From: Macrostomum lignano
Taxonomy: Eukaryota
NCBI GenBank assembly: GCA_002269645.1
Contig: NIVC01002274.1
Coordinates: forward strand, 62,001 to 126,000
Direction: 5' to 3'
Length of the DNA stretch: 64,000 bases
Part shown: one piece after another, positions 4,946 through 45,552 of the stretch
Layout of the letters: the number at the start of each line of letters is the position of its first letter
Position numbering within the stretch: the first letter of the stretch is position 1
Program-made: the position numbers and the translations under genes
Notes under the pieces: generated by a model
What the model saw: the letters and a program-made list of their open reading frames with translations, nothing else
The model's database searches: none
Told to the model about the DNA's origin: nothing

Positions 4946-5001
4946 CTTTTTTATGTTTAGCAGTTTTTTTGTTTTTAAGGTGTTTTAATAAAAAAATCAT
5001 T

Positions 5002-20552: not shown

Positions 20553-23500
20553 ATGTCAAAAGCAAATATGAAGCAATCGGTTTGGGAGCGGATCAAGGAT
20601 CAAAAGTGCCCGTCAGAGCAGGACACTAAGCTAGAGCGCGAGCGCCAGCGAAAGGAGGAGCGCGAGCGTCAGCACCAGCTGCAGCTGCAGGGGCAGCGCG
20701 ATGCCGAACGCTCGGCGAAGCAGGCGGAGGCCGTCGAGTCGATTGTCGAGCTGGTGCGCGTGGCCGCCGAGCGCCTGTCGATGCCGCTGCGTCCAGCCCA
20801 CTTGGCCCAATCCTTCGAGATCTTCTACAAGCAGCCGTTTCCGCTGGACCTGTTCGACCGCAGCTCGGCCGAGGAGGTGGCCGTCAACCTGGCGCTGTCC
20901 GGTCGGCTCGTCTTGGACTCGAAGCGGTGCCTGCGGGTCGCCAGCAACGCCATGGTCGAGTCGGCAAAGTGCAGCGCATCGGCGTCAAAGCGGCAGCTGA
21001 GTCTGCCTGCTGAGGTGAAAAAGCGGCTGCTGTGCATCGCCTACGTTTATCCCGGCCTGCCAGTTCTCCTGCTGCCCGAGAAGTACCGGGAGGAGTGAGT
21101 GCGACTAGCCTTGCCTAGTGGCATAAACTTTGCCTTGATATTTTTCTGAATTATTTTCCTCTTTTAATATTCTTTGCGCATATTTAGTATTGACGCCGCT
21201 TTCATTCGGCATTAATCTCACGCTTTCCACTCTGATTTGTAACTATCTGCGGACGCCACAGTGAAACTGCTGCTGCCTTTATCCCGCAGTTTCAACTGCC
21301 AGCTGCCCAGCTTCTCCAGCATGGGCTGCAACAATCTGTTGGATCTGCTGCGCCAAATCCCGGGCATAGTGCTGATGAAAAATCCCATTGACCCGGATCT
21401 CCGCATCGCCGTGTACGGCACGCGGCTGCCCAACCTGCCGAAGGCGCCGCCGTTTCCCGAGAACTGCGTGCCTCCCGGCTACCGGCTGCCCGTCGAGCGC
21501 ATGCGGCGGCCGCGGCAGCCCGCTGTTGGCACCGAAGTGAGCGCGCACTACCTGCTGCAGCAGCAGTACAACGTGCTGGTGCCGCTGGCCTCAAACTCGG
21601 GCCCGGGCCGCTTCTTCGTGATTCCACACGGCGAGGTGTCGAACCGCCTTGACAAGCTGATGGAGCAGCTGGACTCGGCTGAGCACCCGCCAATGCCGGA
21701 GGTGTACACCAGGCCTGATCAGCTGTGCGTGGCCATCACCAAGCAGGGCTGTCGGCGGGTGAGAATCGTCAGTCATGCTGCCGACGGCTCCGCTGACCGA
21801 CGGCTGGTGGAGGATGTCGACTACGGAGAGCTGCTGACTGTTGGCGTGTCCGACCTGCGCTGCATGCACCGGAGGTTCGCGGAGGGAGTCCCCGCCCACG
21901 CAATTCTGTGCCGACTGGCCTTTCTGATTCCGAATGGCGGAGCCGCCCAGTTTGATGAGGCCGCCGTGAAAGAGTTCCACCGAATCACTCAGGACGTGCT
22001 GCTCAAGCTGACTGTGGATCTTGAGCCCCCAGCTGATCAGGTTGGTTCCTTTGCTGTCATATTTAATCTGCAAGTTATTACATTGATTGATGGGTCTGCA
22101 ACTTTGCTCTTCAGCCGCACGCGCCCTACTCTGTGTATCTGGATGGAGAGATGGGCTCTTTCTTGGAATTTTTCAGCAGACAGTCGCTCGGACTGCTGCC
22201 GATTCAGGTGAGTGATTTATTACTGTTGTACAGGTGATTGCTGGTAGTTAAAAGCGCTTGACAATGTATAATACCGCTTCGTGCTGAAACTTCAGATTGA
22301 CTTCAAGCAGAAGGCTTTCGCACCGCTGGGCAAGGTGGACAGGCTCTGCAAGCCAGACGGCAAGAACGGTAAATAATGAGTTTTGTATTGGGCCTGTAGG
22401 CCTCAGTGGGGATTTATATTGAAACTCTGCCTACTTTTGCAAAGTCGGACAATGTTTGTCATTCCCCGGTCCCGTAGCCGCTCAATGCGAGCCCGAGGCC
22501 AGCGTGCGCACCGGCGGCCACTCCGACATCGAAGAGGTCGGCACCGATGCGGAAGCGGGCAGCAGCCGCGCCATGACGCCCGGCAGCGAAGCTGGCGATG
22601 ACCTCGACGAGAACCTGCAGGAATATAATCATAACCAAGATTATGAGCAGCAGCACTATGAACGTCAAGATTATGAGCAGCAGAACTATGAGCGTCAAGA
22701 TTATGAGCAGCAGAACTATGAGCGTCAAGATTATGAGCAGCAGGACTATGAGCGTCAAGATTATGAGCAGCAGAACTATGAGCGTCAAGATTATGAGCAG
22801 CAGGAGGACTATGAGCGTCAATATTATGAGCAGCAGGGCTATGAGCATCAGGCTGATAATGAGTGGCAGGATTATGAGCCGCAGGCCGATGATGAGCAGC
22901 ATCAGGATTATGAGCAGCAGCAGGATTTTGAGCGGCAGTGTTGTGAGCAGCCGTGTTCCGAACCAATAAGATTCCCGTCTGAAGTCGGCGATAAACTAAC
23001 CTTCAACATGAATGAAGCCCCAGGCGAAAAAAGATCATTTGCGGTCGCAAACCGGTGTAGTGATCTGACTAGACGGGTTAAAGCCACGGATTTACAGAGT
23101 AAGTATTGTGCCTGTAAAGTGGAATAATTTAAGCTTTACACTTTCTAGGATGCATAATTGCATTGCATCTTTGTCTTGTTGTTTGTGTTGTGTTTGTTTT
23201 TAATTGGAATTCGTGAGTTCCAAGTTCCCAAACGGGAAGGGGAGTTTTTGTTCCTAATACGTAGTTAAGCTTTAAGCAGTATGGTACTGCTCACGTTCGG
23301 ATTGCTTATGACTAAATCTAATTGACTATGCTTTGGACTTCAACCAGTCTCATGAAATATATGTTATTACTAGTGGAAATGAATACGAACAGGGCAACTT
23401 AGTTTAGGTTAGGACAGGAGATGTCAGATGGGCACAATGCCGAAAGTACAGGTAGTTTATGATAAAAATCTGATTATCAATCGAAATGAGAGTCGCAAAG

Positions 23501-25494
23501 ATAGGGAGGATAAGTTGAGCTAGGCAAATCCAGTGGATGGAACGATAAAGAAGGCTGAACCAGTGTGGTTGGATTGACTTTTTGGGGCGATCGATAAAAA
23601 ATGTACAGGAGGTTTGAACTGAGAGCCGATCGATAATAAATGTTCAGGAGGGGTTGAACTGAGGGCCGATCGATAATAAATATACAAGAGGGGTTGAACT
23701 GAGGGCCGATCGATAATAAACTTACAAGAGGGGTTGAACTGAGGCCCGATCGATAATAAACTTACAAGAGGGGTTGAACTGAGGGCCGATCGATAATAAA
23801 CTTACAAGAGGGGTTGAACTGAGGGCCGATCGATAATAAACTTACAAGAGGGGTTGAACTGAGGCCCGATCGATAATAAACTTACAAGAGGGGTTGAACT
23901 GAGGGCCGATCGATAATAAACTTACAAGAGGGGTTGAACTGAGGGCCGATCGATAATAAACTTACAAAAGGGGTTGAACTGAGGGCCGATCGATAATAAA
24001 CTTACAAGAGGGTTGAACTGAGGGCCGATCGATAATAAATTTACAAGAGGGGCTGAACTGAGGGCCGATCGATAATAAATTTACAAGAGGGTTGAACTGA
24101 GGGCCGATCGATAATAAACTTACAAGAGGGGCAGAGTCAGAGATTAAGAGTCTGAAATGCGCTCTTGCGGTGGGTCGGCTTAGTTCTAAGAAAAACAGCT
24201 AGCAATGTATTTTATTTATCTGTATATTCAGTTTGTTTTTCATCCTAGATTGGCGTTATTTTTCTGTGACATAACATTCCCAAATCCCTTCGCTTTTTAT
24301 TCAAATCCCCTGGCTATGGCGGCAGGTACAACAAAAGAGTCGGAGAAAAAAAGGTAATCTGAAATCATATTTAGTAAAATCTGCAAAAATGCTTGCAGCG
24401 GCAAATTGCGATTCCATGAGACGGAGCGACGCTCAGATGAAGAAGTCCAGACTCAGCATCCGCCAGAGGGTCTCCCTCGCGGCCGGCGCCCTGGCCGGCA
24501 TCCGAGCCGATTTGGCCTCGGTGCGACAGCCGGCCTGCAGCGGGCTGCTCAGCTCAGCCAGGGCCAGGCTGACTCGCTGCTCAGTTCAGCTGCAGCTGTT
24601 CTGCTTGGAAGAACCTGAGCAGGGCTCCGATGCCAGCAGCAGCAGCAGCGAGTCTGACTTGCCCTGTCAGACTCAGCAGAGTGAGTTCCAATGCCTCGCC
24701 CCAACGTCTACTCCTAGTTTAGCAGCTTCTCACTCGCTTGCGCACATACTCACACCCTTTTCTTTCTGTTTTCTGCTTTTTGTTGGTCTATGTAGTTTGT
24801 TTTTGTTCCTATTATTTACATGTATACATTAATAAATATATGAAGGATAAATAATATTAGTCAAACTTCGATGCCGTTTCAACCCATCATTAACTTTGCA
24901 GAGCAATCTGTCTCCGCTGCGCTGGATCCAAACGCTGTGTCATTCTTTGCTCCCACTGTGCCTCCTCGATTCGCGGCGAAACAGATTAATGAGCAGCGGC
25001 AGCGTGATGAAGAGCAGCGGCAGCTGGATGAGCAACAGCAAATCGTTGCTTTACCTTCGCCTCGTCCACTGCGTCCCTTGCTGCCAATGCAATCGGATTC
25101 GCAGTCCGCAGAAAGTTCCGCCGCGTCCTCTGCCGGCCCCCCAATGGGCCCGCCGCCATCACTGATGAATTGGCCATCAAACACGCCAGGCTTCATGCCG
25201 CAGTCGCCGTTTCCTCCGCAGTCGCCGTTTCCACCGCAGCCGCCGTTTCCGCCGCATTTGTTTATGCACCAGCAGCCACAGCCGCTCCATTCTAGGGGCG
25301 CAATGGGCATCTCGACGGCGTTCGTCCGGCCGCTTATGCCGGCCGCGCCTCAGCCGCCGCCAGTCTGGCCGGCCAACTGGTCTACTAGCGCCTTACAACC
25401 GCAGCAGCAGCAGCAACAGCAATTACAGCAGCAACATGCTTATAACTTTCAAGGCGCTTCTATCTATCAGATGGATTATTGGTGGCAGCAATAA
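20553..25494 (+). CDS. LOTUS-Tudor protein, paralog A (2 LOTUS, extended Tudor, QDYE repeat, PAM2-like motif, P/Q-rich tail), ~984 aa. Exons 20553-21094, 21290-22040, 22115-22207, 22296-22368, 22478-23098, 24399-24680, 24902-25494
   Basis: All introns are GT-AG and phase-compatible (2955 nt). Splicing rebuilds a LOTUS signature EVKKRLLCIAYVYPGLPVLLLPEKYRE-D-FNCQLPSFSSMGCNNLLDLLRQIPGIV. Tudor: LCVAITKQGCRRVRI...VEDVDYG...LRCMHRRFAEGVPAHAILCRLA. The start codon is uncertain. Confidence 0.75.
23590..24131. repeat. 40-bp tandem minisatellite (GGGTTGAACTGAGGGCCGATCGATAATAAACTTACAAGAG), ~13 units, in an intron of paralog A
   Basis: Period 40 read directly; no spacers. Confidence 0.95.
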
Positions 25495-27260: not shown

Positions 27261-27435
27261 TAAATATGTTTCGTCTCGGAGTATGTATGCACTGTCTTTG
27301 CCTCATTGTGGTATACTTACGAGCTCATATGTAGGTACACCTCTAGCCACGCTGCTAGCAACATTCAATAGGTTTGCTAAGTCAGTGGGCTAGCTTAGTT
27401 TAGAGTAGAAATTGGTTCAATGACCTGCTGCCTTC

Positions 27436-31212: not shown

Positions 31213-34200
31213 ATGGAGCAGGTGGCCGTCAATCTGCGCCTATGCATGCGCGTTCCAAATTTAAAACGTCAGCAAAATGTCACTTGCGCGGCCCTTGCCA
31301 GCGAGTACGCTCGCTGCGTTGGTCCGTTGCGATGGCAACAGTTTAATTTTAAATCATTGGAAGACTTGCTAGACTCCATTGACGGCATGCAGGTGTACGA
31401 ATGGCAAGGAGAGTCCTGCGTCCGACTGGTCCTCACTAACCGTAAGCGGCGTATTGTACTGTGAAGCAGTTAGTTGCTGCATCTGGTGACGATTCGGTTA
31501 AGTGACTAATCTAGTGACTTCGAGTGACGCATCTAGTGGCACATTCAGTGACTAATCTGGTGACTTCGAGTGACGCATCTAGTGGCACATTCAGTGACTA
31601 ATCTGGTGACTTCTAGTGATGCATCTAGTGGCACATTCAGTGACTAAACTAGAGACTTTCAGTGACGCATCTAGTGGCACATTCAGTGACTAATCTGGTG
31701 ACTTCCAGTGATGCATCTAGTGGCAAATTCAGTGACTAATCTGGTGACTTCCAGTGACGCTTCTAGAGGCACATTCAGTGACTAATCTGGTGACTTCCAG
31801 TGATGCATCTAGTGGCAAATTCAGTGACTAATCTGGTGACTTCCAGTGACGCTTCTAGAGGCACATTCAGTGACTAATCTGGTGACTTCAAGTGATGCAT
31901 CTAGTGGCACATTCAGTGACTAATCTGGTGACTTCCAGTGACGCTTCTAGTGGCACATTCAGTGACTAATCTGGTGACTTCCAGTGACGCATCTAGTGGC
32001 ACATTCAGTGACTAATCTGGTGACTTCCAGTGACGCTTCTAGTGGCACATTCAGTGACTAATCTGGTGACTTCCAGTGACGCATCTAGTGGCACATTCAG
32101 TTCAGTGACTAATCTGGTGATTTCAGTGACGCATCTAGTGACACTCAGTGACTAATCTGGTGACTTCTAGTGACGCATCTAGTGGCACATTCAGTTCAGT
32201 GACTAATCTGGTGACTTCAGTGACGCATCTAGTGACACTCAGTGACTAATCTGGTGACTTCAAGTGATGCATATACATGTAGTGACACTCCGGACTAATC
32301 TGGTGACGATTCGGTTGAGTGACTAATCTGGTGACTTTAGTGACGCATCTAGTGACACTCAGTGACTAATCTAGTGACTTCTAGTGATGCATCTAGTGGC
32401 ACATTCAGTGACTAATCTGGTGACTTCAGTGGCGCATCTAGTGGCACATTCAGTGACTAAACTAGTGACTTCCAGTGACGCTTCTAGTGGCACATTCAGT
32501 GACTAATCTGGTGACTTCCAGTGACGCATCTAGTGGCACATCAGTTCAGTGACTAATCTGGTGATTTCAGTGACGCATCTAGCGACACTCAGTGACTAAT
32601 CTGGTGACTTCCAGTGATGCATATACATGTAGTGACACTCCGGACTAATCTGGTGACGATTCGGTTGAGTGACTAATCTGGTGACTTCAGTGACGCATCT
32701 AGTGACACTCAGTGACTAATCTGGTGACTTCCAGTGATGCATATACATGTAGTGACACTCCGGACTAATCTGGTGACGATTCGGTTGAGTGACTAATCTG
32801 GTGACTTCAGTGACGCATCTAGTGACAGTCAGTGACTAATCTAGTGACTTCCAGTGACGCATCTATTGACACATTCGGTGACTAATCTGGTGACTTCCAG
32901 TGATGCATCTAGTGACACTCAGTGACTAATCTAGTGATTCAGTAACGCATCTAGTGACACATTTAGTGACTCCCAAACTTGTACTTGCTAAGTGTCTTCA
33001 GCAGCACTTTATAATTAATGCGTACGTCGTATTTATGCTGTGGCTATAAGCCAAGCTAAGCATCACTCCCATAGAATGCCTCCCAGCAAACCGTACGTTT
33101 TTGCGGTCTAAAGGGAGCAAGCAATGCATGATAATAGAATAATAAAGATTAGAAATTGTTAAGATATTTGTCTGCATAAAATTGTTAGAATATTACTTAC
33201 GAGAGTATCTATTTGTAATAACCAACTATTTGTATTAATTTATTATTATTTAATTATTAGCTCTAGCATTGCAATTTTTTGTCCCATGCAGCAAACGAAA
33301 TAATCATAAGCGAGAAGGAACGCCAGATGAAGCGCGAGGAGCTCGAGGAGGAGCTCGAGCGTCAGCTGCAGCGCGAGCGCAAGCGCTACGAGGAGCGCGA
33401 ACGTCAACGAAGACAGAAGCGCGAGGAGGAGCGCGAGCGTCAGCGCCAGCTGCAGCTGCAAGGGCAGCGCGATGCCGAACGCTCGGCGAAGCAGGCGGAG
33501 GCCGTCGAGTCGATTGTCGAGCTGGTGCGCGTGGCCGCCGAGCGCCTGTCGATGCCGCTGCGTCCAGCCCACTTGGCCCAATCCTTCGAGATCTTCTACA
33601 AGCAGCCGTTTCCGCTGGACCTGTTCGACCGCAGCTCGGCCGAGGAGGTGGCCGTCAACCTGGCGCTGTCCGGTCGGCTCGTCTTGGACTCGAAGCGGTG
33701 CCTGCGGGTCGCCAGCAACGCCATGGTCGAGTCGGCAAAGTGCAGCGCATCGGCGTCAAAGCGGCAGCTGAGTTTGCCTGCTGAGGTGAAAAAGCGGCTG
33801 CTGTGCATCGCCTACGTTTATCCCGGCCTGCCAGTTCTCCTGCTGCCCGAGAAGTACCGGGAGGAGTGAGTGCAGATTTCTATTGCAACTCTCTGCTTTG
33901 CTATTTTTGCCGTAAGTCAAGGCGATAGTCGGCTCGCAGCCCAGTCCGCTGACCCCTGAGCACGCACATATACATACAGGCACGCACTCACACAGGGTGT
34001 TCAACTTTTTGACGCGAGATCCTTACCTTTAGTAAAATACATGCCTGTAACTGATGTCTTCAATTGCTGTTCCCGGGAAGGCATAATCTGCACCTGGGAA
34101 AGTGGTACATTTTCCTTCACAATCCATATTAAAAAGTATTGTACTGCGTCCAGCGACTTCTCCGCCACGCAGGCCCGTCAACGACTTCGTGAGCAGGTCG

Positions 34201-37200
34201 TCTTCAGTGAATGTGCTGAACTGTCTTGTTGGGTGGTAGGTCCTTTGGCTACGGACACGAAGGCCTGACTGGCGATTTATGAAATCCAATTGTTTCTGTA
34301 ACTAAGGAATGAGTAAAGTCGATTAAAACGGCACGTAGGCCTGGAAGCGTCCCTGAGTCACTTGCGTCGCCCCAGAGTCATTTCAGAGAGATGACGTAGG
34401 TAAAATAGGAAAGGAGTGTAAATTAGCGAAATGACGCAACATTTGATAAGAAGAAACGTATCGAAAAGTTCATAGATTGGCTGCAGTCATCGTAAGTCTA
34501 CCATTTATTGTCGAATAGAAACCATTCTCATCGCTGCAACATCCGTTGTTGCTCCGAATGTAGTAAGGATGTGAAGAAACATTTTTACAAATTTACTTTT
34601 ACTAATTCAAAATTATTCGACAACGTAAAATTTGAGGATAGGCCAGAGATCAGGTCCCACAGGGTATTAAATTGATTGCTCGTAGTATCAAATGGCTTGC
34701 GGAGAGAATGGTCCGCATTGTCCTGGCGAGTCGGTCTGCCGTTACTTGACTGGCTGCCAAGTCTGTTTCAAGCTGACTCGGAGACCTTAAGACATTTTCT
34801 CCCTGGCCTTGGCTTCCCGTTTGTTGGCTGGATCCCAGAATAGAATTGCGGGATCGCGACAACTGTTTGCGGATGGCCTCATTGACCAGAAAACGGACAC
34901 TTCCTCCCACCTCCCACCAGCGTTTGCTATGCGGTTTCTTCCAGGTGCCCATCCGCTTCTTACTGACGAACGAGTTTGCCCAAACTGTTTCGGGTGATTA
35001 AATCATCCTGGTGATTGCGTCCCGGATAATTTGGTTTTTTATGTTGTAGTCCTCGGATTCTTTGACCGGTTTGTAGATGGCAATAAGTTCGAAATTGCCT
35101 ATCTCGATCGCGATCGTTCGCTCCGCTGTATGTAATCTTGCGACCGGACATTCTCCATAGGGATAAGCTTTCCTCGTCTAGCAAGATTCCTACTTTGTTG
35201 GTGTACGAGTATGCTACTGTTGCTTCTTTGTTTCCGTGCTGGAAGGTTCGAATCCCTTGGCTGTCTTTATTCAGTTCTGTTAGCAGCGTGACCTTTCATT
35301 TTTAAACATGTCTTTGTGCTTTTTGTGCTTTTTTGTTCTTTTCGAAGTTTTTCATCTCCCTCCTCCTTACTCTCCTCCAACGTCGCCTCCCTTCTCTTGC
35401 CTTCTTTATGTGTTCTGTTCTCGGTCCATCTCGGCTCTGGCTTTTCTCGGATGGTCCTCAGTTTCCACTGGGTCCTGGCTCGCACTCTCCTCTCGTCTCT
35501 GTCTCTCATGTTATCTTGCAATACACTGATCCTTGCCCCTATCAGGCCTGCCGCGCGCATTCCAATGCTCCAGCTGTGTGCTGCTAGTTGGATTTTGTTC
35601 TTTGTCTTCCTGGCGTCCTTGGCCATGAGCCCAGCATTCTTATTTTCCCTCCTGTCGTCCCCATCACCATCTCCTCTTGCTTGTCGTCATAGGTGTTTTC
35701 TTCAAATTCGCTCATCCATTTTTAGTTATTTCAAGACCTTGTTCCAATTCGTTCCGTTTACCCATGATGGTTGTGTCATCTGCGAAGAGGGATGTCCGAA
35801 ACTGATGTCCTCTCATTTCGGAGTTAAATTGGTTGATCCTCTGAGGTGGCACTGAGGGACCCGGGAGCCATTGCCATTCGATACCGCGTGGTGTGGCATT
35901 CCTTTCGGCTGCTCTGGTTCTTTCTTCTAATAGTCTAATGCATGCTTGGTGGAATATATTGAACAGGACCGGAGACGTGGGGCATCCCTCACGTAAGCCC
36001 CGTTCTGGTAGCCATTCTCTTCACTATGATTTTTCTTTCCCTGAACTTTGTAGCTGGTGTACTCATGCAGATCTCTTACTCATGCTGCTCCTCCGCCGCT
36101 TCTGAAGCCGTCCTCGACCGAACCGTCGGTCCAGATGACGTGGTCCGTGAGACGGGACACGGTTGGTTCAGCGTGGGCTGCGCGGAGTTCTGCTGACATT
36201 TGACGTGATGTTTCTTTGGCGGCCGACGTGTCGAAGCGGACTTCAAGGCTGTTGTCGATGGTCCACGGTGCTGGGCCGATTGCCGCTGGTGCTCTTGGGT
36301 GGGCCTTAAGCGTGGCGTTGCAGTCCAGTTCTTGTGCGATGCGCCGCCAGCAGGCGTGGAACGGGTGGTTGGCGTCCGAGAGCGCGTCCGGGATGCGTTC
36401 TTGGCGCCGGCCACCGTCGGTCGGGGTGTTCCGTGCGGCTTCATAGGTCCGGTTTTTGAGTCTTGGTCGCTGGGTTGCGGTTGCTGCTTGGTGCACTGGA
36501 ATATCGGCCGGTAGTCTGGCCATCCTCTCGCGGAGGTTGACAGCCCTTTCCGCGGCGACGTGATGGAGGAGCGGCAGGTTGGCGACGGCCAGCAGTTTGT
36601 CCGTCCGGGAGGGCATTACGCAGCCAGTGATTAAGCGTGCGCACGCGTTCTGTTGGCGCTCAACGAGGGCCCGGTTGCTTGGGGCTGCGCTCGTTAGCCA
36701 GATGGCACTGCCGTAGTCCGCAATGGAGCGGCAGGTTGCGATGTAGGCTGCGCGCAGTGTTCTTTGGTCGGCGCCCGTTTGTCTGTCTGCGATCATCTGG
36801 ATCGGTCGGCGTCTAGCTGCCATTCTGCGTCTGATGTCCTTGGCGTGCTCTCCGAAGCCGAGGTGGTCATCGAATTTGACGCCTAGGAAGGTCGGGGTCG
36901 CCTCGAACCGCAGTGGGGCTTCGTCGATGTTGAGGTCGAGTCGTGTTTTGCCTCTGTTCTCGGCCGGGGTTAGCGTGAAGGTGCTGTAGCTGCACTTCTC
37001 GGGGCTGAGCTCGACCTTCCATCTCTTGCACCACCCGACGATGACGTCCAGAGCCGGTTGCAGCCTGTTCTTGCATTCGTGCAGACTTTTCTTGGTGGCG
37101 AGTATCGCGCTGTCGTCGGCGTACAGGCTCACACTCGTGTCCGGTGAAGCGGCTTGGATGGTGTCCGGGAGGGTGTTGATGTAGACCAGCCATAAGAGCG

Positions 37201-39084
37201 GGGCCAGGACGCTGCCTTGTGGGAGCCCCTCGCGGAAGGTGCGTTCCTTGCTGTTGATGGTGCCTACCCGGACCTTGGCTCTTCTGTACGCCAGAAAGCT
37301 GTTGATCCATCTTAGGACACAGGGTGGGGTGCTGACCTCTTTAATTTTCAGAAGGAGGGCTCTCTTCCAGACCCTGTCGTAGGCGCAGGAGAAGTCCAGG
37401 TGTCCGAGGATGGAGCGCAGTGCTGGGGATCTTTCGAAGCCGTCGAAGATTCGTTGGGAGATGCGGGCGATTTGCTCCTCGCATGATCTGCCCTTTCGGA
37501 ACCCGGCTTGCACTCCGCTGCTCTTACCGGTGGACTCAAGGAAGTGGCTGAGCCGGTGGTAGACCAGTCGTTCTGCGACCTTTGCGATACAACTAGTGAG
37601 GGCGACCGGTCTGTAACTGCCGAGTTCCTCCGCCGTTTGCTGCGTTTTTTATGGAAATGATAGTGGCGCATCGCCATTGGTGCGGGCATTTCCCGGTCAG
37701 CCACGATTTATTCACCAAGTCGAGCAGCCTTTTTCCGTGGGGCTCCCAAGGTACTTCAGCATCTCGTTCGTGACCTGATCGTCGCTGGGGCTCTTGCCCT
37801 TCAGTACGTTTTTAAGCTCCGCTGCGGAGAAGGCTGAGCAGAGCCCCTTTCGGTCGTTCCTGTTACAGCAGGTGGCTTGCATAGCTCTGTAGGCCTGGTA
37901 GTTGATGGTGCGGTCGTCGCGGTCACGTGGGTTCCGTGAGATGCTGGCGTAGAAACCGCAGAATGCTTTCGCTTTTTCTCTATCGTTAATGGCGGTTCTG
38001 GAGGGGCTGTCTCGGGTCGGGTCGGCCGGAATCTTGCGCGCCGCGTTTGGGGGCGGTGGGGCCGGGTCGCCTCGGAGAGACCGTATGATTGCGAAAAAGT
38101 CGGAATTCATGTTCAGCGTCGCAGTCTTTTCTCTTCTCACAACTGCCGCTGCTGCTGCTGCTGCCTGGGTGGCGTAGATCATGTGACTGCAGTAATTGCT
38201 GCTGCTTTGACGACATAAAGGCACAGAGCAGGGCTCGTAATACTATCCGAACACTTGTGTAATCTGGAATATAATTAAATGGCCGGAATACGGTAGAAGC
38301 TCTGCATTATCAGACCGCTTTCATATTAAAAATCTTAACTAATATGTACGTTCAGTTAGGCCAAAGCTTAGAGGCACCAGGCTACCTGATGTGCTTAAAT
38401 CTCCGACAGAAAGAGACGTGGGATCGACAGAAACCGCCGCAGGATTGGCACGAATGGTTGCATGATCAGCAGAGCCAGCTGGAGCACAGACACTTGACTT
38501 ACTTTGACTTAGCTGCAGGGGGCTCCGTGCGTCCGGAGACAGCGAGGAGGCGTTGCCGCCCATTTCGCTAGCCCCTGGCGACCACGGGCAGCTAGTGCTG
38601 CGGTGTCGCGCAGGGAGTTCCGGTAGCGCCGGTGTCCGCAGCGCGGTCCCCCTCCAGAGAGTCCAGGAGGTGGATTGTCGCTCGGCCGGTAGCCCTTAGG
38701 TAGCGGACGAGCTGGTAGAGATCCTCGGGCCTGAAAACGTCGGAGAGGTCCGGGTTTGGGCCGAGGTAGGTGAGCCTGTCCTGAGTAAAGACGGGGCATT
38801 CACAGATGAAGTGCTCCGCATTCTCGACACCGGAGAGGCAGAAAGGGCATTCCTCACTGCGGATTTTCCCCTGGAGGTGACGATGCCAGCAGAGACACTC
38901 AGTATTTCCTGCAGTAGCGACGTAGCCATCAGCTGTTTTGGTCGGCGGGAATGCAACTTGGAGCAAAGTAGGTGGTGGCAACTGCCTAGACACATCCAGC
39001 TGCCAGTTAGGTTTCGTGGTTGTCCGAATTCAACGCAGAGGCACGCCACTACTTTGGCTGCTACTACTGCTGTTGTTGTTGTTG

Positions 39085-39133
<49 letters not shown>

Positions 39134-42100
39134 CGCCTAGCACCGAGCCGCCACTAGTGACTTCCTTCCAGGCAAATCTTCCTCCAGAATTCGACCGCGT
39201 TCCATGGTCTCCTATTCAAGTCTCGCATCTCGTGCAGGTCCAGACCAGCTCCTCTCTAAGGCTGCGCGTGACGGGGCACTCCATGACGTGCTCCAGCGTC
39301 TCGGCCTCCAAACCGCACCTCGTACACCAGCCCTCCTCTTTTCTACCCATACGCTTCCTGTACTCCGCCAGGTCCATAGAGTGGCCACTCCTGAATCGTC
39401 TGAAGTCAACCGCTTCCTGCCTGCTTAGGCCCTTCGGCTGGGGCGCCGCTCCCTGCTCTCCATACGTTTCCCTGCTTCTCCTGTGGCTTCTGCCGTCATC
39501 TCTGCCCAGCTTGTTCTGGATGTACTTCCAGTTGCTGCTGGCCGGCACCCCGATGCCCTCCTGGGCCCGTGTTGCTGGCCGCTTTGTCCGCTAACTCGTT
39601 TCCGGTCAAGCCGCAGTGCGCGGGCACCCAGATCAGCTTCCTCTAGCTTCCTCTAGCTTCCTCAAACCACCTTCTCTTCCTCCTCCAGCTTCCTCAGCAT
39701 TTTCCTGGCTCTGAGGGCCAATGGTTTTCTGCTCAGGCCTTTAATAGCCTGCAGGCAGCTCTGACTGTCGCTAATGATCGCGGTGCTTTCACCTTTGCTG
39801 GTGCACCCTTCGAGCCAATTTAGGCCAGCTATGACCGCATAGAGCTCCGCTTGCTTTGAGCAGGGCACTCCCGGGGCTTGATGGATGGTCGCTTCCACTT
39901 TACAAATACCCTCCGGGTCGCTCACCGTTGGCTGGCACACCACTCCACTACCTCCTCTGCCGATGCGGGCGTCGCGGAGGGCCGGGCAGCTGATCCAGTG
40001 CTTCAGGTCCTCCGGACCTTCGCCCCAATAAATGCAGTTGGTGTCAGCTGCCGGGTTGACCGTCCATCAGGCCGTAGGCCCTGAGAAGGCTGCAATGACC
40101 AGATCGCAGTCTGGCCAGAAGGACCGCCTCCTGGCAATTTTTCAGCTCGGCGCGCTTTTTTTGGCGGTTCAGCGCACTGTAGCCGAGCGCAGTCCGTGCG
40201 TGGTGAAGGGGCGGGTTGCCGAGGCACCGTTTATTCGCAGCGACCGCGCTAGCCAGAGAGAGGAGCCTGGGGCGGCGGCCAGAGTGCCGTGGCCGCTTTA
40301 TCAGCGATTTCGTTGCCGGCCAGGCCGCAGTGAACTGGGACCCATTGCAAAATGATGGTAGCGGCGTATGTGTCCGGATGCAGCAGGGTGTGGTCGAGGG
40401 TGAAGTTCGACAGCGCCGAGAGCAGCGCCCTGCTGTTGCTGCAGATCAGGGCTCGGCCTGCGAAGGGATGTAGACAGAGCCAGTCGAGGGCGAGAATGAG
40501 AGCCCGCCTTTCCTCATCGAAGCTGCAGGTCAAGGCAGCACCGCGCGCGGTGATCGTATCGATGACGGTCGGTTTGGCGGGGTCGCCGCTGGTGATCAGA
40601 CAGACCGCTCCTCCAGATTGGCAGCCCTTAGAGACGGAGCCGTCCATATACAGGACCAGGTCAGCCGCCGCTTGTCTAATGGTATTCTCCGCGTGCCACC
40701 TGGCTCGCATCGCGGCGTCAGCCTGAGAATCCGCGTCGGTAGGGGCAGCGTGAAGCGGGTGGAGGGCTGTAGACGCGCTGAGAGCAGCGGTGGAGCGCCT
40801 CCACGGGCACGGTGGAACGGCCGACAGCGGCTCGCGGGGGAAAAGTCTCCCGGCATATTTGTCAGGAGCAGCTCGGCGCGGTGACGCCAGCTACTTCTGG
40901 CCGTGCGGTGCGGGACCTGACCCTTTGCGGTGCAGCGGCAAGGGTGCGCGGCAGGCAAGCAGAGCGCCTTCTCGTACGCGGTGAGACAGAGCTGCTTGCG
41001 CATCGTGTCCGCCGTGCAGTTACCGGCTTCCAGATGCAGGGCTTCCACCGGCGTAGTGCGCAATTGACGTAACAATGCGCAGGACCTGGTTTTGAGCACG
41101 CTGGAGTCAGAAAGCTAGGGTTGCCACGATGAGGCCGTGTAGTACCTGACGTTGAAAATTAGGGCTTTGAGGGTGCACATGACGCTCTCCTTAGGCCAGC
41201 CCCATGACCTGGCCGACAGGCAGGCCAGGGTGCGGGACCGGCTGTTTACAACTCTTCACACTTCGGCGACCTGCTTGGTGCCAAAGTTGGCGGGTCACAC
41301 AGCCAGTAAATAACTTAAGTTTTATAGTTTTAAAAAACTTGTCACATAAAAATTGGCCCAGTAGTTTCAGAGATGTTATGAAACACACATAACACACACA
41401 AACAACGCGTCACTTTTATTATATTGCGATAATTTGTTACTACTAACCTGCCTACGATATGAAATTTGTTACTACTAACACATTACTACGATATGAAAAA
41501 GCGCTACGAAGTACGTAGCTCGTAACTTCCAACATAACACGTTTGTATCTGAAATTGCGCAAGCTTGACCGTTATTCACAGCCCGTTATTCACAGCCCGT
41601 TATTCACAGCCCGTTATTCACAGCCAACGCTGCATTATTTAGCTTAAATTGGACGGAGCCCCGATTGGATAATCATTTTCTGACCTCATTCCGACAGATT
41701 TAATTGCGACCTGCCCAGCTTCTCCAGCATGGGCTGCAACAATCTGTTGGATCTGCTGCGCCAAATCCCGGGCATAGTGCTGATGAAAAATCCCATTGAC
41801 CCGGATCTCCGCATCGCCGTGTACGGCACGCGGCTGCCCAACCTGCCGAAGGCGCCGCCGTTTCCCGAGAACTGCGTGCCTCCCGGCTACCGGCTGCCCG
41901 TCGAGCGCATGCGGCGGCCGCGGCAGCCCGCTGTTGGCACCGAAGTGAGCGCGCACTACCTGCTGCAGCAGCAGTACAACGTGCTGGTGCCGCTGGCCTC
42001 AAACTCGGGCCCGGGCCGCTTCTTCGTGATTCCACACGGCGAGGTGTCGAACCGTCTGGACAAGCTGATGGAGCAGCTGGACTCGGCTGAGCACCCGCCA

Positions 42101-45100
42101 ATGCCGGAGGTGTACACCAGGCCTGATCAGCTGTGCGTGGCCGTCACCAAGCAGGGCTGTCGGCGGGTGAGAATCGTCAGTCATGCTGCCGACGGCTCCG
42201 CTGACCGACGGCTGGTGGAGGATGTCGACTACGGAGAGCTGCTGACTGTTGGCGCGTCCGACCTGCGCTGCATGCACCGGAGGTTCGCGGAGGGAGTCCC
42301 CGCCCACGCAATTCTGTGCCGACTGGCCTTTCTGATTCCGAATGGCGGAGCCGCCCAGTTTGATGAGGCCGCCGTGAAAGAGTTCCACCGAATCACTCAG
42401 GACGTGCTGCTCAAGCTGACTGTGGATCTTGAGCCCCCAGCTGATCAGGTTGGTTCCTTTGTTGTCATATTTAATCTGCAAGTTATTAAATTGATTGGTG
42501 GGTCTGCAACTTTGCTCTTCAGCCGCACGCGCCCTACTCTGTGTATCTGGATGGAGAGATGGGCTCTTTCTTGGAATTTTTCAGCAGACAGTCGCTCGGA
42601 CTGCTGCCGATTCAGGTGAGTGATTTATTACTGTTGTACAGGTGATTTCTGGTAGTTAAAAGCGCTTGACAATGTATAATACCGCTTCGTGCTGAAACTT
42701 CAGATTGACTTCAAGCAGAAGGCTTTCGCACCGCTGGGCAAGGTGGACAGGCTCTGCAAGCCAGACGGCAAGAAGGGTAAATAATGAGTTTTGTATTGGG
42801 CCTGGAGGCCTCAGTGGGGATTTATATTGAAACTCTGCCTACCTTTGCAAAGTCGGACAATGTTTTTCATTCCACGGTCCCGTAGCCGCTCAATGCGAGC
42901 CCGAGGCCAGCGTGCGCACCGGCGGCCACTCCGACATCGAAGAGGTCGGCACCGATGCGGAAGCGGGCAGCAGCCGCGCCATGACGCCCGGCAGCGAAGC
43001 TGGCGATGGCCTCGACCAGAACCTGCAGGAATATGATCATAACCAAGATTATGAGCAGCAGGACTTTGAGCGTCAAGATTATGAGCAGCAGGACTATGAG
43101 CGTCAAGATTATGAGCAGCAGGACTATGAGCGTCAAGATTATGAGCAGCAGGACTATGAGCGTCAAGATTATGAGCAGCAGGAGGACTATGAGCGTCAAT
43201 ATTATGAGCAGCAGGACTATGAGCGTCAAGATTATGAGCAGCAGGACTATGAGCGTCAGGCTGATGATGAGCCGCAGGCTGATGATAGGCAGCAAGCTGA
43301 TGATGAGCAGCGGCAGAATTATGAGTGGCAGGATTATGAGCGTCAAGATTATGAGCGGCAGGACTATAAGCGTCAAGATTATGAGCAGCAGGCTGGTGAT
43401 GAGCATCAAGATTGTGAGCAGCCGGATGATTATGAGCAGCAGGATGATGAGCAGCAGGCCGATGAGGAGCAGCAGGATGATGAGCAGCAAGCCGATGAGG
43501 AGCAGCAGGCCAATAATGAGCAGCAGGCCGATGAGGAGCAGCAGGCCGATGATGAGCAGCAGGCCGATGAGGAGCAGCAGGCCGATGAGGAGCAGCAGGC
43601 CGATGAGGAGCAGCAGGCCGATGATGAGCAGCAAGCTTATGAGCAGCAGGCCGATGATGAGCAGCAGGCCGATGATGAGCAGCAGGCCGATGATGAGCAG
43701 CAGGCCGATGATGAGCAGCAGGCCGATGATGAGCAGCAAGCTTATGAGCAGCAGGCCGATGATGAGCATCAACAAGACTATGAGCAGCATGGTTATGAGC
43801 AGCAGGTTGACAAATTTCTTGAAGCGAAGCAGTCAGTCTTTAAGTTTGCTGTGAAACCAACTGAGCAAAAGGAATCGCATGCTGGGATCCCTGCCGCAAG
43901 ACAAGCTGGTGATCAGGCCCGCGTTCAGGGCGCAACGGGTTCGCATGGTGAATATAATCAGCTTTGATTTTCCTTTTTATGTCAATTTCTCACTGCATTG
44001 TGTAGAGTGCCATGATTTATTGAAACTCCTCTCCCAACTCTGCAGAGAGCGGCCGAGTTGCCGACCAGCAGCCTAAGCAGACAGACGGTGCAGCCGTTTG
44101 CCAAATTGTTGGCTCTGGCGGTAAGTTGGGCCTGTTTAAGTTCACGACACGTTACTTTCCTGTTACGAAGCGCTATCGTTTAATCCCGTTAATTTTGTTT
44201 GTTTATTTACCGAGGCTGTGATGACTCGTGCGAGGTAATTGCAGACGAGGCAATGGTCAGAGACCAGATGCACCGGAGTCACAGGTTGCACAGGCCGTAC
44301 CGGCACAAAGAAGCGAGGGAATTCGAAGGGAACCCGATCGGCACGACAAAGCCATCACCATTAACCAGCTTTTAGTAACTCACCTGTGCTGTATACCATT
44401 TCAATCTCGACTTTGGCAAAAGTGACTTTGATTTTGGCGACACATTGTTGAAATTTTTGTCTAAGGCGCGTGGATCTCTGCAGAATGGAGAACGACTGGT
44501 GCGCAGCTTCCAAGAAGGAGGAGTTAATCATCCATAATTTAACGATGAAGATCATATTGATTTGAGGCAACGGGGAGGAGTCGTGAGGACAAAAGTCATT
44601 GAGGACAATTGTGACACATTGATCACTAATGGTTTTTAGTGAGATTTGTTCTCAGTTTCTTGAAACCTTTTCCCCAGTTTCTAATCGTTGTTGTTGCAAT
44701 TTAAAAAAGGATTTTTCTCCGCACGAGTCATCGCAATCTCGTAAGCGTTGAAAATTCTGTTTACAGTTTTTTATTATTTTGACCGTGCAACTGTTTCAGT
44801 TTCACCATTTCTGTTCTTTGTTGATTGATTGACAATGGGCAGGTTTGAGCGGGCGTGTCTCCCGCTGCGCTGTTCCGTTGACGAAGTCCAGACTCAGCAT
44901 CCGCCAGAGGGTCTCCCTCGCGGCCGGCGCCCTGGCTGGCATCCGAGCCGATTTGGCCTCGGTGCGACAGCCGGCCTGCAGCGGGCTGCTCAGCTCAGCC
45001 AGGGCCAGGCTGACTCGCTGCTCAGTGCAGCTGCAGCTGTTCTGCTTGGAAGAAGAACCTGAGCAGGGCTCCGATGCCAGCAGCAGCAGCGAGTCTGACT

Positions 45101-45552
45101 TGCCCTGTCAGACTCAGCAGAGTGAGTTCCAATGCCTCCTCCCGCCACCTCGCCCCCTCTCAGTTCCAACGCTTTGTGTGAGCCCAATATGGGCAGCCTT
45201 AATTGAGTGAACCATTCGCTATGGATTCGTTGTGTTGCTCCATTTCAGACTCGACTGTGCTCAGCCCAGAGGCGGTGCCGTTTTTCTCGCCTCTGCGGCG
45301 GCCTCTTGCTCCGCCTCGCTTTCGTGCGCTGGTCGCAGGGCAGCAACAGTCTGCCATGACGGTAAGATCTCCGCTGTCTTATCAAAATGGTTGGCCATGT
45401 GATAGGCGCTGGTCGAAAGACACTGCTTATCTTTCGCTCACTTGCAGCCGCAGCAGCAGCCTCCACTATCATCTGGTGCAGTATCAACACTGCCACAGCT
45501 GCCTACTTTGCCGCCAGGCCAATTGATGGGCGGCTGGGGCCGGTTCAAGTGA
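31213..45552 (+). CDS. LOTUS-Tudor protein, paralog B (3 LOTUS + 1 Tudor = TDRD5/Tejas-like, long acidic repeat, PAM2-like motif), ~1117 aa. Exons 31213-31441, 33292-33865, 41698-42448, 42523-42615, 42704-42776, 42886-43947, 44046-44120, 44843-45121, 45249-45361, 45448-45552
   Basis: Exon 1 is a LOTUS domain (VTCAALASEYARCVGPLRWQQFNFKSLEDLLDSIDGM) ending C|GTAAGC in phase 1, matching the phase-1 acceptor ATGCAG|CA at 33292. All ten exons are phase-compatible (3354 nt). The last four exons are less certain. Confidence 0.72.
31505..32975. repeat. 46-bp minisatellite built from ~15-bp subunits (GTGACTAATCTGGTGACTTCCAGTGACGCATCTAGTGGCACATTCA) in intron 1 of paralog B
   Basis: Period 46 read directly. 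Confidence 0.95.
36075..38130 (-). mobile_element. Non-LTR retrotransposon ORF2 fragment A: reverse transcriptase to the start of RNase H (I/Ingi-like), truncated at both ends and disrupted
   Basis: QAGFRKGRSCEEQI, LDFSCAYDRVW, GLPQGSVLAPLLW, YADD, FLGVKFD, VIWTDGSV. The upstream frame 37712-38130 carries the pre-RT linker. Confidence 0.9.
38575..38925 (-). mobile_element. Non-LTR fragment B: C-terminal zinc-binding region of ORF2
   Basis: ECPFCLSGVENAEHFICECP followed by LVRYLRATGR. Confidence 0.7.
39140..39960 (-). mobile_element. Non-LTR fragment C: RNase H and C-terminal CCHC region, followed by a (CA)n/(CAA)n tail at ~39060-39135
   Basis: KQAELYAVIAGL, IISDSQS, CGLTGNELAD, FRRFRSGH, CTRCGLEAETLEHVMECP. 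Confidence 0.8.
39960..41290 (-). mobile_element. Non-LTR fragment D: RT C-terminus, RNase H and C-terminal region, frameshifted
   Basis: LRTTPVEALHLEAG, LVLYMDGSV, EERRALILALDWL, LQWVPVHCGLAGNEIADKAA, LLARLRSGH. Confidence 0.8.

What the first reader, a model, noticed from the sequence alone, without database searches (positions are those of the whole stretch)
20553..45552. Tandem pair of hidden LOTUS-Tudor (TDRD5/Tejas-like) germ-granule genes
The ORF track shows only fragments. Splicing them gives LOTUSx3-Tudor (B) and LOTUSx2-Tudor (A), with one LOTUS domain split by a phase-2 intron. Known: LOTUS+Tudor proteins (TDRD5, TDRD7, Tejas, Tapas, LOTR-1) stimulate Vasa-type helicases and organise nuage for piRNA biogenesis. 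The Tudor here lacks the usual cage aromatics (ITKQGCRR instead of a WYR-type motif, VEDVDYG instead of VxFVDYG), so methyl-arginine binding may be lost. A lineage-specific duplicated pair could be part of stem-cell/germline chromatoid-body machinery (inference).
Basis: partly seen in the sequence, partly recalled or inferred. Interest (0 to 1): 0.72.

Follow-up and report, generated by a model that had tools for sequence, protein, structure and literature searches.

The report
Flatworm LOTUS-Tudor gene pair, already annotated
The window is Macrostomum lignano (flatworm) DNA and does hold two spliced neighbouring genes for proteins that combine LOTUS and Tudor domains, like the germ-granule proteins TDRD5/Tejas; both genes are already in the public annotation, one claimed LOTUS domain per gene could not be confirmed, and nothing here shows what they do.

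Summary
The window is Macrostomum lignano contig NIVC01002274.1 (100% match). Two + strand genes flank a uroporphyrinogen decarboxylase gene. Gene A (20553-24832/25494) equals NCBI PAA59344.1 residue for residue. Gene B (31213-45552) fits the NCBI 1116-aa partial product. The phase-2 intron inside a LOTUS domain is real: 195 nt in A, 7832 nt in B.

Domains confirmed:
- An extended Tudor domain: Pfam 35-41 bits; AlphaFold pLDDT 85.7; Foldseek E 3e-12 to TDRD1, TDRD2 and Papi eTudors.
- The split LOTUS domain: 36.5 bits, 0 of 3000 shuffles.
- B's N-terminal LOTUS: Pfam 19.5 bits; 10.4 bits, 0 of 3000 shuffles.

The middle "LOTUS" has no support (-1.5 bits; 1552 of 3000 shuffles as good). That leaves two supported LOTUS domains in B and one in A.

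The aromatic cage is degenerate. Thr, Arg and Asp replace three aromatic residues and Glu replaces Asn.

No ortholog outside M. lignano was found, so TDRD5/Tejas membership rests on architecture only. Expression and function are untested. The genes are not "hidden": they are annotated as "hypothetical" or "Tudor domain-containing" proteins, without LOTUS. I call this a new, divergent member of a known kind, of moderate-to-low interest.

The parts
20553..21094 (+). Gene A exon 1: start codon, Glu/Arg-rich helical stretch (20634-20702), unverified 'middle LOTUS' segment (20724-20948), N-terminal half of the split LOTUS domain (from 21003)
   Evidence: Splice model equals PAA59344.1; donor GGA|GTGAGT, phase 2
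21095..21289 (+). Gene A intron 1, phase 2, 195 nt, interrupts the LOTUS domain
   Evidence: no DNA similarity to the B intron
21290..22040 (+). Gene A exon 2: C-terminal half of the LOTUS domain (to 21422), linker, Tudor core (Pfam stretch about 21606-21938)
22115..22207 (+). Gene A exon 3: last strand and helix of the SN-like part of the extended Tudor domain (eTudor spans 21567-22207)
   Evidence: AlphaFold pLDDT 89-94 over these residues; Foldseek about 200 aligned columns to eTudors
22296..22368 (+). Gene A exon 4 (24 codons plus 1 nt, low-confidence linker)
22478..23098 (+). Gene A exon 5: acidic 10-residue DYEQQxYERQ repeats (30-nt unit, 7 copies, 22636-22850)
24399..24680 (+). Gene A exon 6 (conserved block KSRLSIRQ...CQTQQ, 24443-24679). 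The NCBI model reads through the donor to a stop at 24832
   Evidence: 96.6% identical to B 44879-45138
24902..25494 (+). Proposed last exon of gene A (not in the NCBI model): PAM2-like motif at 24925-24972, then a Pro/Gln-rich tail. Gives a 984-aa product
   Evidence: Open frame in phase with donor 24680; homologous motif in B exon 9. Inferred, with no transcript evidence seen here
31213..31441 (+). Gene B exon 1: N-terminal LOTUS domain (31216-31440), absent from gene A
   Evidence: Pfam OST-HTH 19.5 bits, E 9e-4; custom LOTUS profile 10.4 bits, 0 of 3000 shuffles; in frame with the NCBI gene starts at all three loci; no second copy in the window
33292..33865 (+). Gene B exon 2: Glu/Arg-rich helical stretch, unverified middle segment (33495-33719), N-terminal half of the split LOTUS (from 33774)
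33866..41697 (+). Gene B intron 2, phase 2, 7832 nt, interrupts the LOTUS domain; filled with antisense degraded non-LTR retrotransposon pieces
   Evidence: RVT_1 36080-37513(-), RNase H 40249-40710(-); its first part is also present at the allelic locus L001
41698..42448 (+). Gene B exon 3: C-terminal half of the LOTUS domain (to 41830), linker, Tudor core (about 42014-42346)
42523..42615 (+). Gene B exon 4: end of the extended Tudor domain (eTudor spans 41975-42615)
42704..42776 (+). Gene B exon 5
42886..43947 (+). Gene B exon 6: long acidic repeat region (DYEQQ 30-nt units, then DDEQQA 18-nt units; 43020-43817). Donor 43948 chosen to fit the annotated length; UniProt models use a donor inside the repeats
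44046..44120 (+). Gene B exon 7
44843..45121 (+). Gene B exon 8 (conserved block shared with A exon 6)
45249..45361 (+). Gene B exon 9 (PAM2-like motif 45263-45322)
45448..45552 (+). Gene B exon 10, with stop codon 45550-45552
   Evidence: Matches the C-terminus of UniProt A0A1I8GFU3

Best explanation
These are two intact, multi-exon protein-coding genes of the flatworm Macrostomum lignano. They sit on either side of a uroporphyrinogen decarboxylase gene.

Architecture (shown):
- Gene B encodes about 1117 aa: an N-terminal LOTUS domain, a Glu/Arg-rich helical stretch, a 75-residue segment of unknown fold, a second LOTUS domain split by a phase-2 intron, one extended Tudor domain, a long acidic repeat region, and a short conserved C-terminal block.
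- Gene A encodes 837 aa as annotated, or 984 aa with the proposed last exon. It is the same protein without the N-terminal LOTUS domain and with a different tail.

Likely mechanism (inferred from the LOTUS and Tudor families, not tested):
- They act as scaffold proteins of germ-cell or stem-cell RNA granules, in the manner of TDRD5/Tejas.
- B's N-terminal LOTUS domain would dock a Vasa-type DEAD-box helicase.
- The eTudor domain has lost three of its four cage aromatics and the Asn. It would bind a partner without needing methyl-arginine, as TDRD2, Krimper eTud1 and TOFU-6 eTudors are reported to do (from memory).
- The acidic repeats would promote condensation.
- A lacks the N-terminal LOTUS, so it would share B's Tudor-side partners but not its helicase contact.

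The two genes appear to be old duplicates whose domain-coding blocks are kept 97-99% identical by gene conversion (inferred).
For: - Organism and gene identity.
- Splice structure: canonical junctions and an exact match of A to PAA59344.1.
- Tudor domain: Pfam 35-41 bits; PDB TDRKH at E 3e-6; AlphaFold model at pLDDT 85.7; Foldseek E 3e-12 and TM 0.78 to TDRD1 TD3, then TDRD2, Papi, SND1 and Tudor eTudors.
- LOTUS domains: Pfam; library-wide match of the split LOTUS to a multi-LOTUS protein, P0056, at E 7e-4; custom profiles scoring 36.5 and 10.4 bits with 0 of 3000 shuffles reaching them; the three best PDB matches of the profile are LOTUS-type chains, two of them TDRD7.
- Cage: columns that hold F/Y, Y, F/Y, Y and N in 30 related eTudors hold T, R, D, Y and E here.
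- Intactness and constraint: the A-UROD-B arrangement with open frames at all three copies of the locus; pN/pS 0.38 between A and B.
- Mosaic identity between A and B.
Against: - There are no expression, localisation or interaction data for these genes. The gene identifier gave no hit in full-text or supplement searches.
- No homolog with the same architecture was found outside M. lignano. The closest Tudor relatives are multi-Tudor proteins without LOTUS.
- Whether B's first LOTUS is the extended, Vasa-binding subtype was not tested.
- The pN/pS estimate rests on only 15 substitutions.
- Structure prediction of the LOTUS region failed (pLDDT 38.7).
- The NCBI models for A retain an intron at the 3' end, so the true C-terminus is uncertain.
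Confidence: 0.6

Rival explanations
1. They are members of the large, fast-evolving M. lignano expansion of germline-type Tudor genes. Their role is unrelated to TDRD5/Tejas, for example a reproductive-tissue or somatic RNA-granule adaptor. On this reading the LOTUS domains act as RNA-binding or other modules, as minimal LOTUS domains may, and not as Vasa activators.
For: [quoted passage not shown]
- The split LOTUS is most like the repeats of a multi-LOTUS protein with no Tudor domain, P0056.
- PMC12147562 counts 63 extended-Tudor genes in M. lignano, 36 of them in orthogroups without annotation. It lists none under TDRD5 or TDRD7.
- The cage is degenerate.
Against: - According to PMC9200344, LOTUS together with Tudor in one protein is known only from the TDRD5/7 group.
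- B's first LOTUS sits at the extreme N-terminus and is followed by a helix-prone stretch, as in the extended LOTUS of TDRD5/7. This is inference only.
- The best PDB matches of the LOTUS profile include two TDRD7 chains.
Confidence: 0.28
2. One or both copies are decaying duplicates. A would be a 5'-truncated partial copy. B would be disrupted by 7.8 kb of retrotransposon debris in the intron that splits its LOTUS domain. Either would then make no functional protein.
For: - A lacks exon b1, and its 5' end is unrelated to B upstream of 20647.
- The NCBI models of A retain an intron and end in a hydrophobic read-through.
- B carries a very large intron full of transposon fragments.
- No outside homologs were found to show long-term constraint.
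Against: - All exons are open, and all junctions are canonical in both genes.
- Both genes are intact at all three copies of the locus.
- Coding blocks show fewer non-synonymous than synonymous changes (pN 0.007 against pS 0.019).
- The insertion is intronic and antisense, and its start is shared with the allelic locus.
Confidence: 0.1

Closest known systems
TDRD5 / Drosophila Tejas
   Same: A LOTUS domain at the extreme N-terminus (gene B), further LOTUS-type domain(s), a single extended Tudor domain and a long disordered region. The family recruits Vasa through its extended LOTUS and drives granule formation through its eTudor and disordered region (PMC5458760, PMC10412688).
   Different: - No detectable sequence orthology.
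- The Tudor cage has lost three of four aromatics and the Asn.
- Acidic DYEQQ and DDEQQA repeats and a Glu/Arg-rich helical insert sit between the LOTUS domains.
- Gene A has no N-terminal LOTUS.
- The Spindle-E recruiting site of Tejas was not looked for.
TDRD7 / Drosophila Tapas
   Same: LOTUS domains combined with extended Tudor domains. The best solved-structure matches of the split-LOTUS profile include the TDRD7 LOTUS chains 2LH9 and 2LY1.
   Different: According to PMC12147562, TDRD7 has several Tudor domains, whereas there is only one here. The PDB E-values are weak (0.2-0.3).
C. elegans LOTR-1 (TDRD5/7-like)
   Same: A very divergent LOTUS + LOTUS + single Tudor protein that ordinary BLAST does not recognise. 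Its aromatic cage is partly degenerate (two of four replaced), while the Arg/Asp pair that stabilises the pocket is retained (PMC9200344). R85 and D106 are likewise invariant and retained here.
   Different: LOTR-1 keeps two cage aromatics, whereas only one remains here. No sequence link was shown. LOTR-1 works with ZNFX-1 in Z granules, which was not testable here.
Extended Tudor domains with incomplete cages (TDRD2/TDRKH, Krimper eTud1, TOFU-6)
   Same: The same eTudor fold: Foldseek E 3e-12 to 1e-11 for TDRD2 and 4e-8 for TOFU-6; Krimper eTud1 is weaker at 6e-6 to 5e-5 with TM 0.42-0.60. From memory, these domains are reported to bind unmethylated partner peptides.
   Different: The accessory domains differ (KH, none, others). 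The substitutions here are polar or charged (Thr, Arg, Asp, Glu) rather than hydrophobic.

Membership tests
Extended Tudor (eTudor, germline 'T3' type) domain proteins | Tudor core recognised by Pfam PF00567 above its gathering score | tested here: met
   40.9 bits (B) and 35.4 bits (A) against a cut-off of 23; TDRKH in the PDB at E 3e-6
Extended Tudor (eTudor, germline 'T3' type) domain proteins | Tudor barrel embedded in an SN-like fold of about 180-200 residues | tested here: met
   AlphaFold model with pLDDT 85.7 and pTM 0.76. Foldseek aligns about 200 columns to TDRD1 TD3, TDRD2, Papi and SND1 eTudors, with E down to 3e-12 and TM up to 0.79
Extended Tudor (eTudor, germline 'T3' type) domain proteins | Four-residue aromatic cage plus Asn for symmetric dimethyl-arginine | tested here: not met
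   The cage columns hold T, R, D, Y and E, where 30 related eTudors have F/Y, Y, F/Y, Y and N. The same residues occur in A, B and the six other M. lignano paralog proteins retrieved
LOTUS / OST-HTH domain proteins | Pfam PF12872 at or above its gathering score for the protein | tested here: met
   Met for B: 28.4 bits against 23.8, from two stretches. Not met for A: no hit was listed for the whole protein, and its one LOTUS fragment scores 16.9 bits alone
LOTUS / OST-HTH domain proteins | Each claimed domain resembles known LOTUS domains more than chance allows | tested here: inconclusive
   Tested with a profile built from P0056 repeats and fragments of TDRD7 (2LH9) and 8WXS. Split LOTUS: 36.5 bits, 0 of 3000 shuffles. 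B's N-terminal LOTUS: 10.4 bits, 0 of 3000. Middle segment: -1.5 bits, with 1552 of 3000 shuffles as good. So two of the three claimed domains pass and one fails
LOTUS / OST-HTH domain proteins | Winged-helix LOTUS fold | tested here: inconclusive
   The single-sequence AlphaFold model had pLDDT 38.7, and its Foldseek matches were meaningless. No alignment could be built because no homologs were found
TDRD5 / Tejas (and TDRD7 / Tapas) family | LOTUS domain(s) and extended Tudor domain(s) in one polypeptide | tested here: met
   B has two supported LOTUS domains and one eTudor; A has one of each
TDRD5 / Tejas (and TDRD7 / Tapas) family | N-terminal LOTUS of the extended subtype, with the C-terminal alpha-5 helix needed for Vasa binding (PMC5458760) | not tested
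   B's first LOTUS is followed by NPNEIIISEKERQ..., which looks helix-prone. No structure or alignment to extended LOTUS domains was obtained. A has no N-terminal LOTUS at all
TDRD5 / Tejas (and TDRD7 / Tapas) family | Orthology: closest relatives are TDRD5/7 proteins | tested here: not met
   In HMMER against 1.84 billion representatives, the only match below 1e-30 is a M. lignano paralog of gene A (P0003). The other matches hit Tudor domains of multi-Tudor proteins. None of the 16 matches scanned by Pfam carries both LOTUS and Tudor; the only one with LOTUS, P0056, has no Tudor. No phylogeny could be made
TDRD5 / Tejas (and TDRD7 / Tapas) family | Germline or nuage localisation, and binding and stimulation of Vasa | not testable with these tools
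   No expression or interaction data were found for Mlig020006

The most novel reading that the evidence does not exclude
These genes would be the flatworm's functional counterpart of TDRD5/Tejas, diverged beyond the reach of orthology pipelines. A recent survey (PMC12147562) lists no TDRD5/7 group for M. lignano. Their eTudor domain would have switched to methyl-arginine-independent partner binding. Paralog A has lost the N-terminal LOTUS, so it would act as a Vasa-uncoupled competitor or modulator of B in chromatoid bodies or nuage. Gene conversion would keep the shared domains of the pair matched.
Probability: 0.15. Interest if true: 0.55.

Novelty: new member of a known kind. Interest (0 to 1): 0.35.

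Why it matters
M. lignano is a laboratory model for stem cells, regeneration and the germline. According to PMC12147562 it has the largest known set of germline-type Tudor genes, and most of them are unclassified.

Recognising LOTUS domains in a gene pair so far labelled only "hypothetical" or "Tudor domain-containing" gives a concrete candidate for the missing TDRD5/7-type Vasa adaptor in this animal. The pair is also a natural experiment. One paralog has the N-terminal LOTUS and the other does not, and both have a Tudor domain without a methyl-arginine cage.

The gain is an improved annotation and a testable hypothesis, not a new kind of system.

Tried and rejected
1. A spliced B protein could not be handed to the representative search, so a substring of P0003 was used instead.
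2. The search for homologous proteins with exon b1 found no protein sharing words with it. With the clean core it returned nothing, not even the query's own protein. No alignment of orthologs could therefore be built.
3. Single-sequence AlphaFold of the middle and split LOTUS region failed (pLDDT 38.7). Foldseek on that model gave only noise.
4. PDB sequence searches with each LOTUS segment alone gave nothing significant.
5. MAFFT alignment of the three putative LOTUS segments was misled by an out-of-register match. Pairwise Smith-Waterman with shuffles showed no in-register similarity among them.
6. A second copy of exon b1 upstream of gene A was sought by tblastn and not found.
7. A PAM2 reading of the conserved C-terminal motif has no Pfam support.
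8. Literature and supplement searches for the gene identifiers and for flatworm TDRD5/7 found nothing specific.
9. Rfam and tRNA scans of the window were empty.
10. The idea of a very recent duplication was set aside. A-B divergence in the core (1.3%) is close to that between locus copies (1.0%), all locus copies carry both genes, and DNA outside three islands is unalignable.
Full report
**Where the window comes from**

A spliced translation of the region matched three Macrostomum lignano protein clusters at 99-100% identity. They are named "Tudor domain-containing protein" in UniProt and "hypothetical protein BOX15_Mlig020006g1" in NCBI. Cluster look-up added PAA59344.1 (Mlig020006g2), PAA74183.1 (Mlig026543g1) and four UniProt entries. 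The contig carrying PAA59344.1 is NIVC01002274.1 of assembly GCA_002269645.1. It is 100% identical to window 10553-34832 over 24,280 bases. The window is therefore flatworm nuclear DNA, and the bacterial-style ORF list naturally shows only exon fragments.

**Gene structures**

Gene A uses canonical GT-AG junctions. Its exons are 20553-21094, 21290-22040, 22115-22207, 22296-22368, 22478-23098 and 24399 onward.

- If the last exon is read through to the stop at 24832, the translation equals PAA59344.1 exactly (837 aa).
- An alternative is to splice from the good donor at 24680 to 24902-25494. This gives 984 aa. Its first residues are homologous to exon 9 of gene B. It is my proposal and is not annotated.

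Gene B has exons 31213-31441, 33292-33865, 41698-42448, 42523-42615, 42704-42776, 42886-43947, 44046-44120, 44843-45121, 45249-45361 and 45448-45552.

- This model gives 1117 aa. NCBI annotates a 1116-residue product whose gene range starts at window 31216, one codon after the ATG. That product itself could not be retrieved, so the agreement is in length and frame only.
- At the two other copies of the locus, the B gene ranges start 9 nt before and 96 nt after the same ATG. Both offsets are in frame with it.
- Exon b1 is therefore consistent with being coding in the public models, although the UniProt models lack it.
- UniProt models also use a donor inside the acidic repeats. The repeat region may be alternatively spliced.

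In both genes the intron after exon a1/b2 is phase 2 and falls inside a LOTUS domain. It is 195 nt in A and 7832 nt in B. In B it is packed with antisense fragments of non-LTR retrotransposons.

**Relation between the two genes**

DNA identity is confined to three islands:

- 20647-21102 against 33418-33873, 98.9%
- 21281-22934 against 41688-43342, 96.6%
- 24438-24697 against 44879-45138, 96.6%

Over the shared core the proteins are 470/475 identical. The remaining DNA is unalignable even with short words. That includes intron 1, 1.5 kb in the middle, the 5' ends and the last exons. Within the core, pS is 0.019, pN is 0.007 and small-intron divergence is 0.030.

All three copies of the locus in the assembly have the order A, UROD, B. 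A differs from its counterpart at L003 by 1.0% and from B by 1.3%. I read this as an older duplication whose domain-coding blocks are homogenised by gene conversion. That is an inference. A is effectively B without exon b1 and with a new 5' end and a different tail.

**Tudor domain**

- Pfam TUDOR scores 35.4 bits (A) and 40.9 bits (B) against a cut-off of 23.
- The best PDB sequence match is the TDRKH/TDRD2 eTudor at E 3e-6.
- An AlphaFold model was built from a 31-sequence alignment of related Tudor domains. It reached pLDDT 85.7 and pTM 0.76.
- The model is confident through the residues encoded by exon a3, which fits the splice model.
- Foldseek against the PDB returned only extended Tudor domains at the top: TDRD1 TD3 (E 3e-12, TM 0.78), then TDRD2, Papi, SND1, Tudor, Spindle-E, Krimper, Qin and TOFU-6.

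The methyl-arginine cage was checked on the alignment columns:

| Cage column | 30 related eTudors | This protein |
|---|---|---|
| 1 | F/Y in 24 | Thr |
| 2 | Y in 27 | Arg |
| 3 | F/Y in 24 | Asp |
| 4 | Y/F in 27 | Tyr (retained) |
| Asn | N in 23 | Glu |

The invariant Arg, Asp and Gly are kept. Loss of methyl-arginine binding is a reasonable inference, but it was not measured.

**LOTUS domains**

| Segment | Pfam OST-HTH | Custom LOTUS profile | Other evidence |
|---|---|---|---|
| B exon b1 (N-terminal LOTUS) | 19.5 bits alone | 10.4 bits, 0 of 3000 shuffles | none |
| Split LOTUS (A and B) | 16.9 bits alone | 36.5 bits, 0 of 3000 shuffles | matches P0056 (below) |
| Middle segment (A 20724-20948, B 33495-33719) | no hit | -1.5 bits, 1552 of 3000 shuffles as good | no PDB hit |

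- For whole-protein B, the two Pfam stretches together give 28.4 bits, above the 23.8 cut-off. For whole-protein A, no OST-HTH hit was listed.
- In the search of 1.84 billion representatives, the split LOTUS matched P0056 at E 7e-4. P0056 is a 1531-aa protein with an OST-HTH domain (96.5 bits) and DUF7515 repeats. Locally the split LOTUS scores 49 bits over four of those repeats.
- A profile of those repeats plus the split LOTUS has as its three best PDB matches an 80-residue Drosophila chain (8WXS) and two TDRD7 LOTUS entries (2LY1, 2LH9). The last aligns over nearly its whole length, but the E-values are only 0.2-0.3.
- The custom profile in the table was built from the P0056 repeats and the PDB fragments. 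An earlier, smaller profile gave the same picture for the middle segment.
- Single-sequence structure prediction of the LOTUS region failed.

The supported architecture is therefore LOTUS, helical stretch, unknown segment, LOTUS, eTudor for B. A has the same architecture without the first LOTUS. LOTUS domains are known to be hard to see by sequence (PMC9200344), so the middle segment is unverified, not excluded.

**Family placement**

Outside M. lignano nothing matched beyond single domains. The other 59 listed matches were all above E 1e-30. Of the 16 scanned with Pfam, 15 are Tudor-domain proteins without LOTUS, carrying MYND, RING, B-box or SNase accessories. The sixteenth is P0056, which has LOTUS but no Tudor domain. 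Orthology to TDRD5/Tejas or TDRD7/Tapas is therefore not shown. The resemblance is in architecture only.

That architecture is nevertheless reported as specific to the TDRD5/7 group (PMC9200344). TDRD5/Tejas has a single eTudor, as here (PMC12147562). A 2025 survey counts 63 extended-Tudor genes in M. lignano, 36 of them in unannotated orthogroups, and lists none under TDRD5 or TDRD7. These genes plausibly sit among the unannotated ones.

**Function**

Function is inferred from published work, not tested here. In flies, the extended LOTUS of Tejas, Tapas and Oskar binds and stimulates Vasa. The Tejas eTudor and disordered region drive granule formation (PMC5458760, PMC10412688).

By analogy, B would be a granule scaffold that docks a Vasa-type helicase at its N-terminus and a partner on its cage-less eTudor. 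A would lack the helicase contact. I could not test whether B's first LOTUS has the alpha-5 extension that Vasa binding requires. No paper or supplement mentions the gene identifiers.

**Verdict**

- The LOTUS count is overstated by one per gene.
- "Hidden" is an artefact of the ORF track, since both genes are already annotated.
- "TDRD5/Tejas-like" is fair as a description of architecture but unproven as family membership.
- The biological role is untested.
- The added value is the recognition of LOTUS domains in genes annotated without them, and the contrast between the two paralogs.
- I rate it a new, divergent member of a known kind, with interest 0.35.

Noticed in passing
window 27436-29844 (+): A uroporphyrinogen decarboxylase gene (Pfam URO-D, two coding blocks) lies between genes A and B. 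Its intron carries a 28-nt minisatellite at 28595-29324. The order A-UROD-B is conserved at all three copies of the locus.
   Followed up: partly
window 33866-41697, mainly 36080-40710 (-): The large intron of gene B holds several degraded non-LTR retrotransposon fragments, antisense to the gene: RVT_1 at 36080-37513, an RNase H-like piece at 40249-40710, an RVT_3-like piece at 39662-39943, and zinc-knuckle ORF ends at 38592-38993 and 39216-39548.
   Followed up: partly
window 20647-21102 / 33418-33873; 21281-22934 / 41688-43342; 24438-24697 / 44879-45138: A and B are 97-99% identical only in three islands, which include small introns. The DNA between the islands is unalignable, including the intron that splits the LOTUS domain. 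This looks like gene conversion between old duplicates and not like a recent duplication.
   Followed up: partly
window 24925-24972 (A) and 45263-45322 (B): A short motif, LxPxAVxFFxP...PPRF, is the only conserved piece of the otherwise diverged exon a7/b9. It resembles a PAM2 (PABP-binding) motif, but with a one-residue spacing difference and no Pfam hit.
   Followed up: partly
window 31216-31260 vs 33642-33761 (and 20871-20990): The start of B's first LOTUS (EQVAVNLRL..CMRV) resembles the end of the unverified middle segment (EEVAVNLAL..CLRV) out of register (z = 5.9, 0 of 1000 shuffles). It may be chance or a trace of an internal rearrangement.
   Followed up: no
window 22636-22850, 43044-43258, 43377-43768: The coding tandem repeats are a 30-nt unit (DYEQQxYERQ, 7 copies) in both genes and an extra 18-nt unit (DDEQQA, about 22 copies) in B only. 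Repeat number differs between locus copies, whose B products are 1051, 1082 and 1116 aa. UniProt models splice from inside the repeats.
   Followed up: partly
window 6997-10024 and 10991-14029: A large inverted duplication with 3-kb arms, 98.3% identical. Each arm carries a 143-aa ORF with no Pfam match.
   Followed up: no
window 47575-48303 and 50397-50777 (-): Exons of a non-receptor tyrosine kinase gene (SH2 domain and Tyr kinase domain) lie on the minus strand downstream of gene B.
   Followed up: no
window 52964-54775 (+): An intact 603-aa ORF has weak Spin-doc zinc-finger and DUF4371 matches. It looks like a hAT-type transposase or a gene derived from one.
   Followed up: no
window 55815-57522 (+): A fragment of an LTR-retrotransposon pol gene (RT-RNase H, integrase zinc-binding domain and integrase core), broken by a frame change.
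   Followed up: no
window 2208-4958, 5793-6308, 18113-18484, 23584-24131, 25977-27259, 31501-32862: There are many minisatellites, with measured units of 23, 40, 28 and 46 nt for the last four arrays (the first two arrays were seen only by self-BLAST and were not sized). Several sit in introns of A and B. The 28-nt array at 25977-27259 creates long spurious ORFs in five of the six reading frames.
   Followed up: no
tool behaviour: The word-indexed protein search found no protein containing exon b1, although the NCBI gene range for B starts within it and in frame. A second search with the clean core returned nothing at all, not even the gene's own protein. 'No homolog' from that tool is therefore weak evidence here. 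The full HMMER scan is the basis for that statement.
   Followed up: partly
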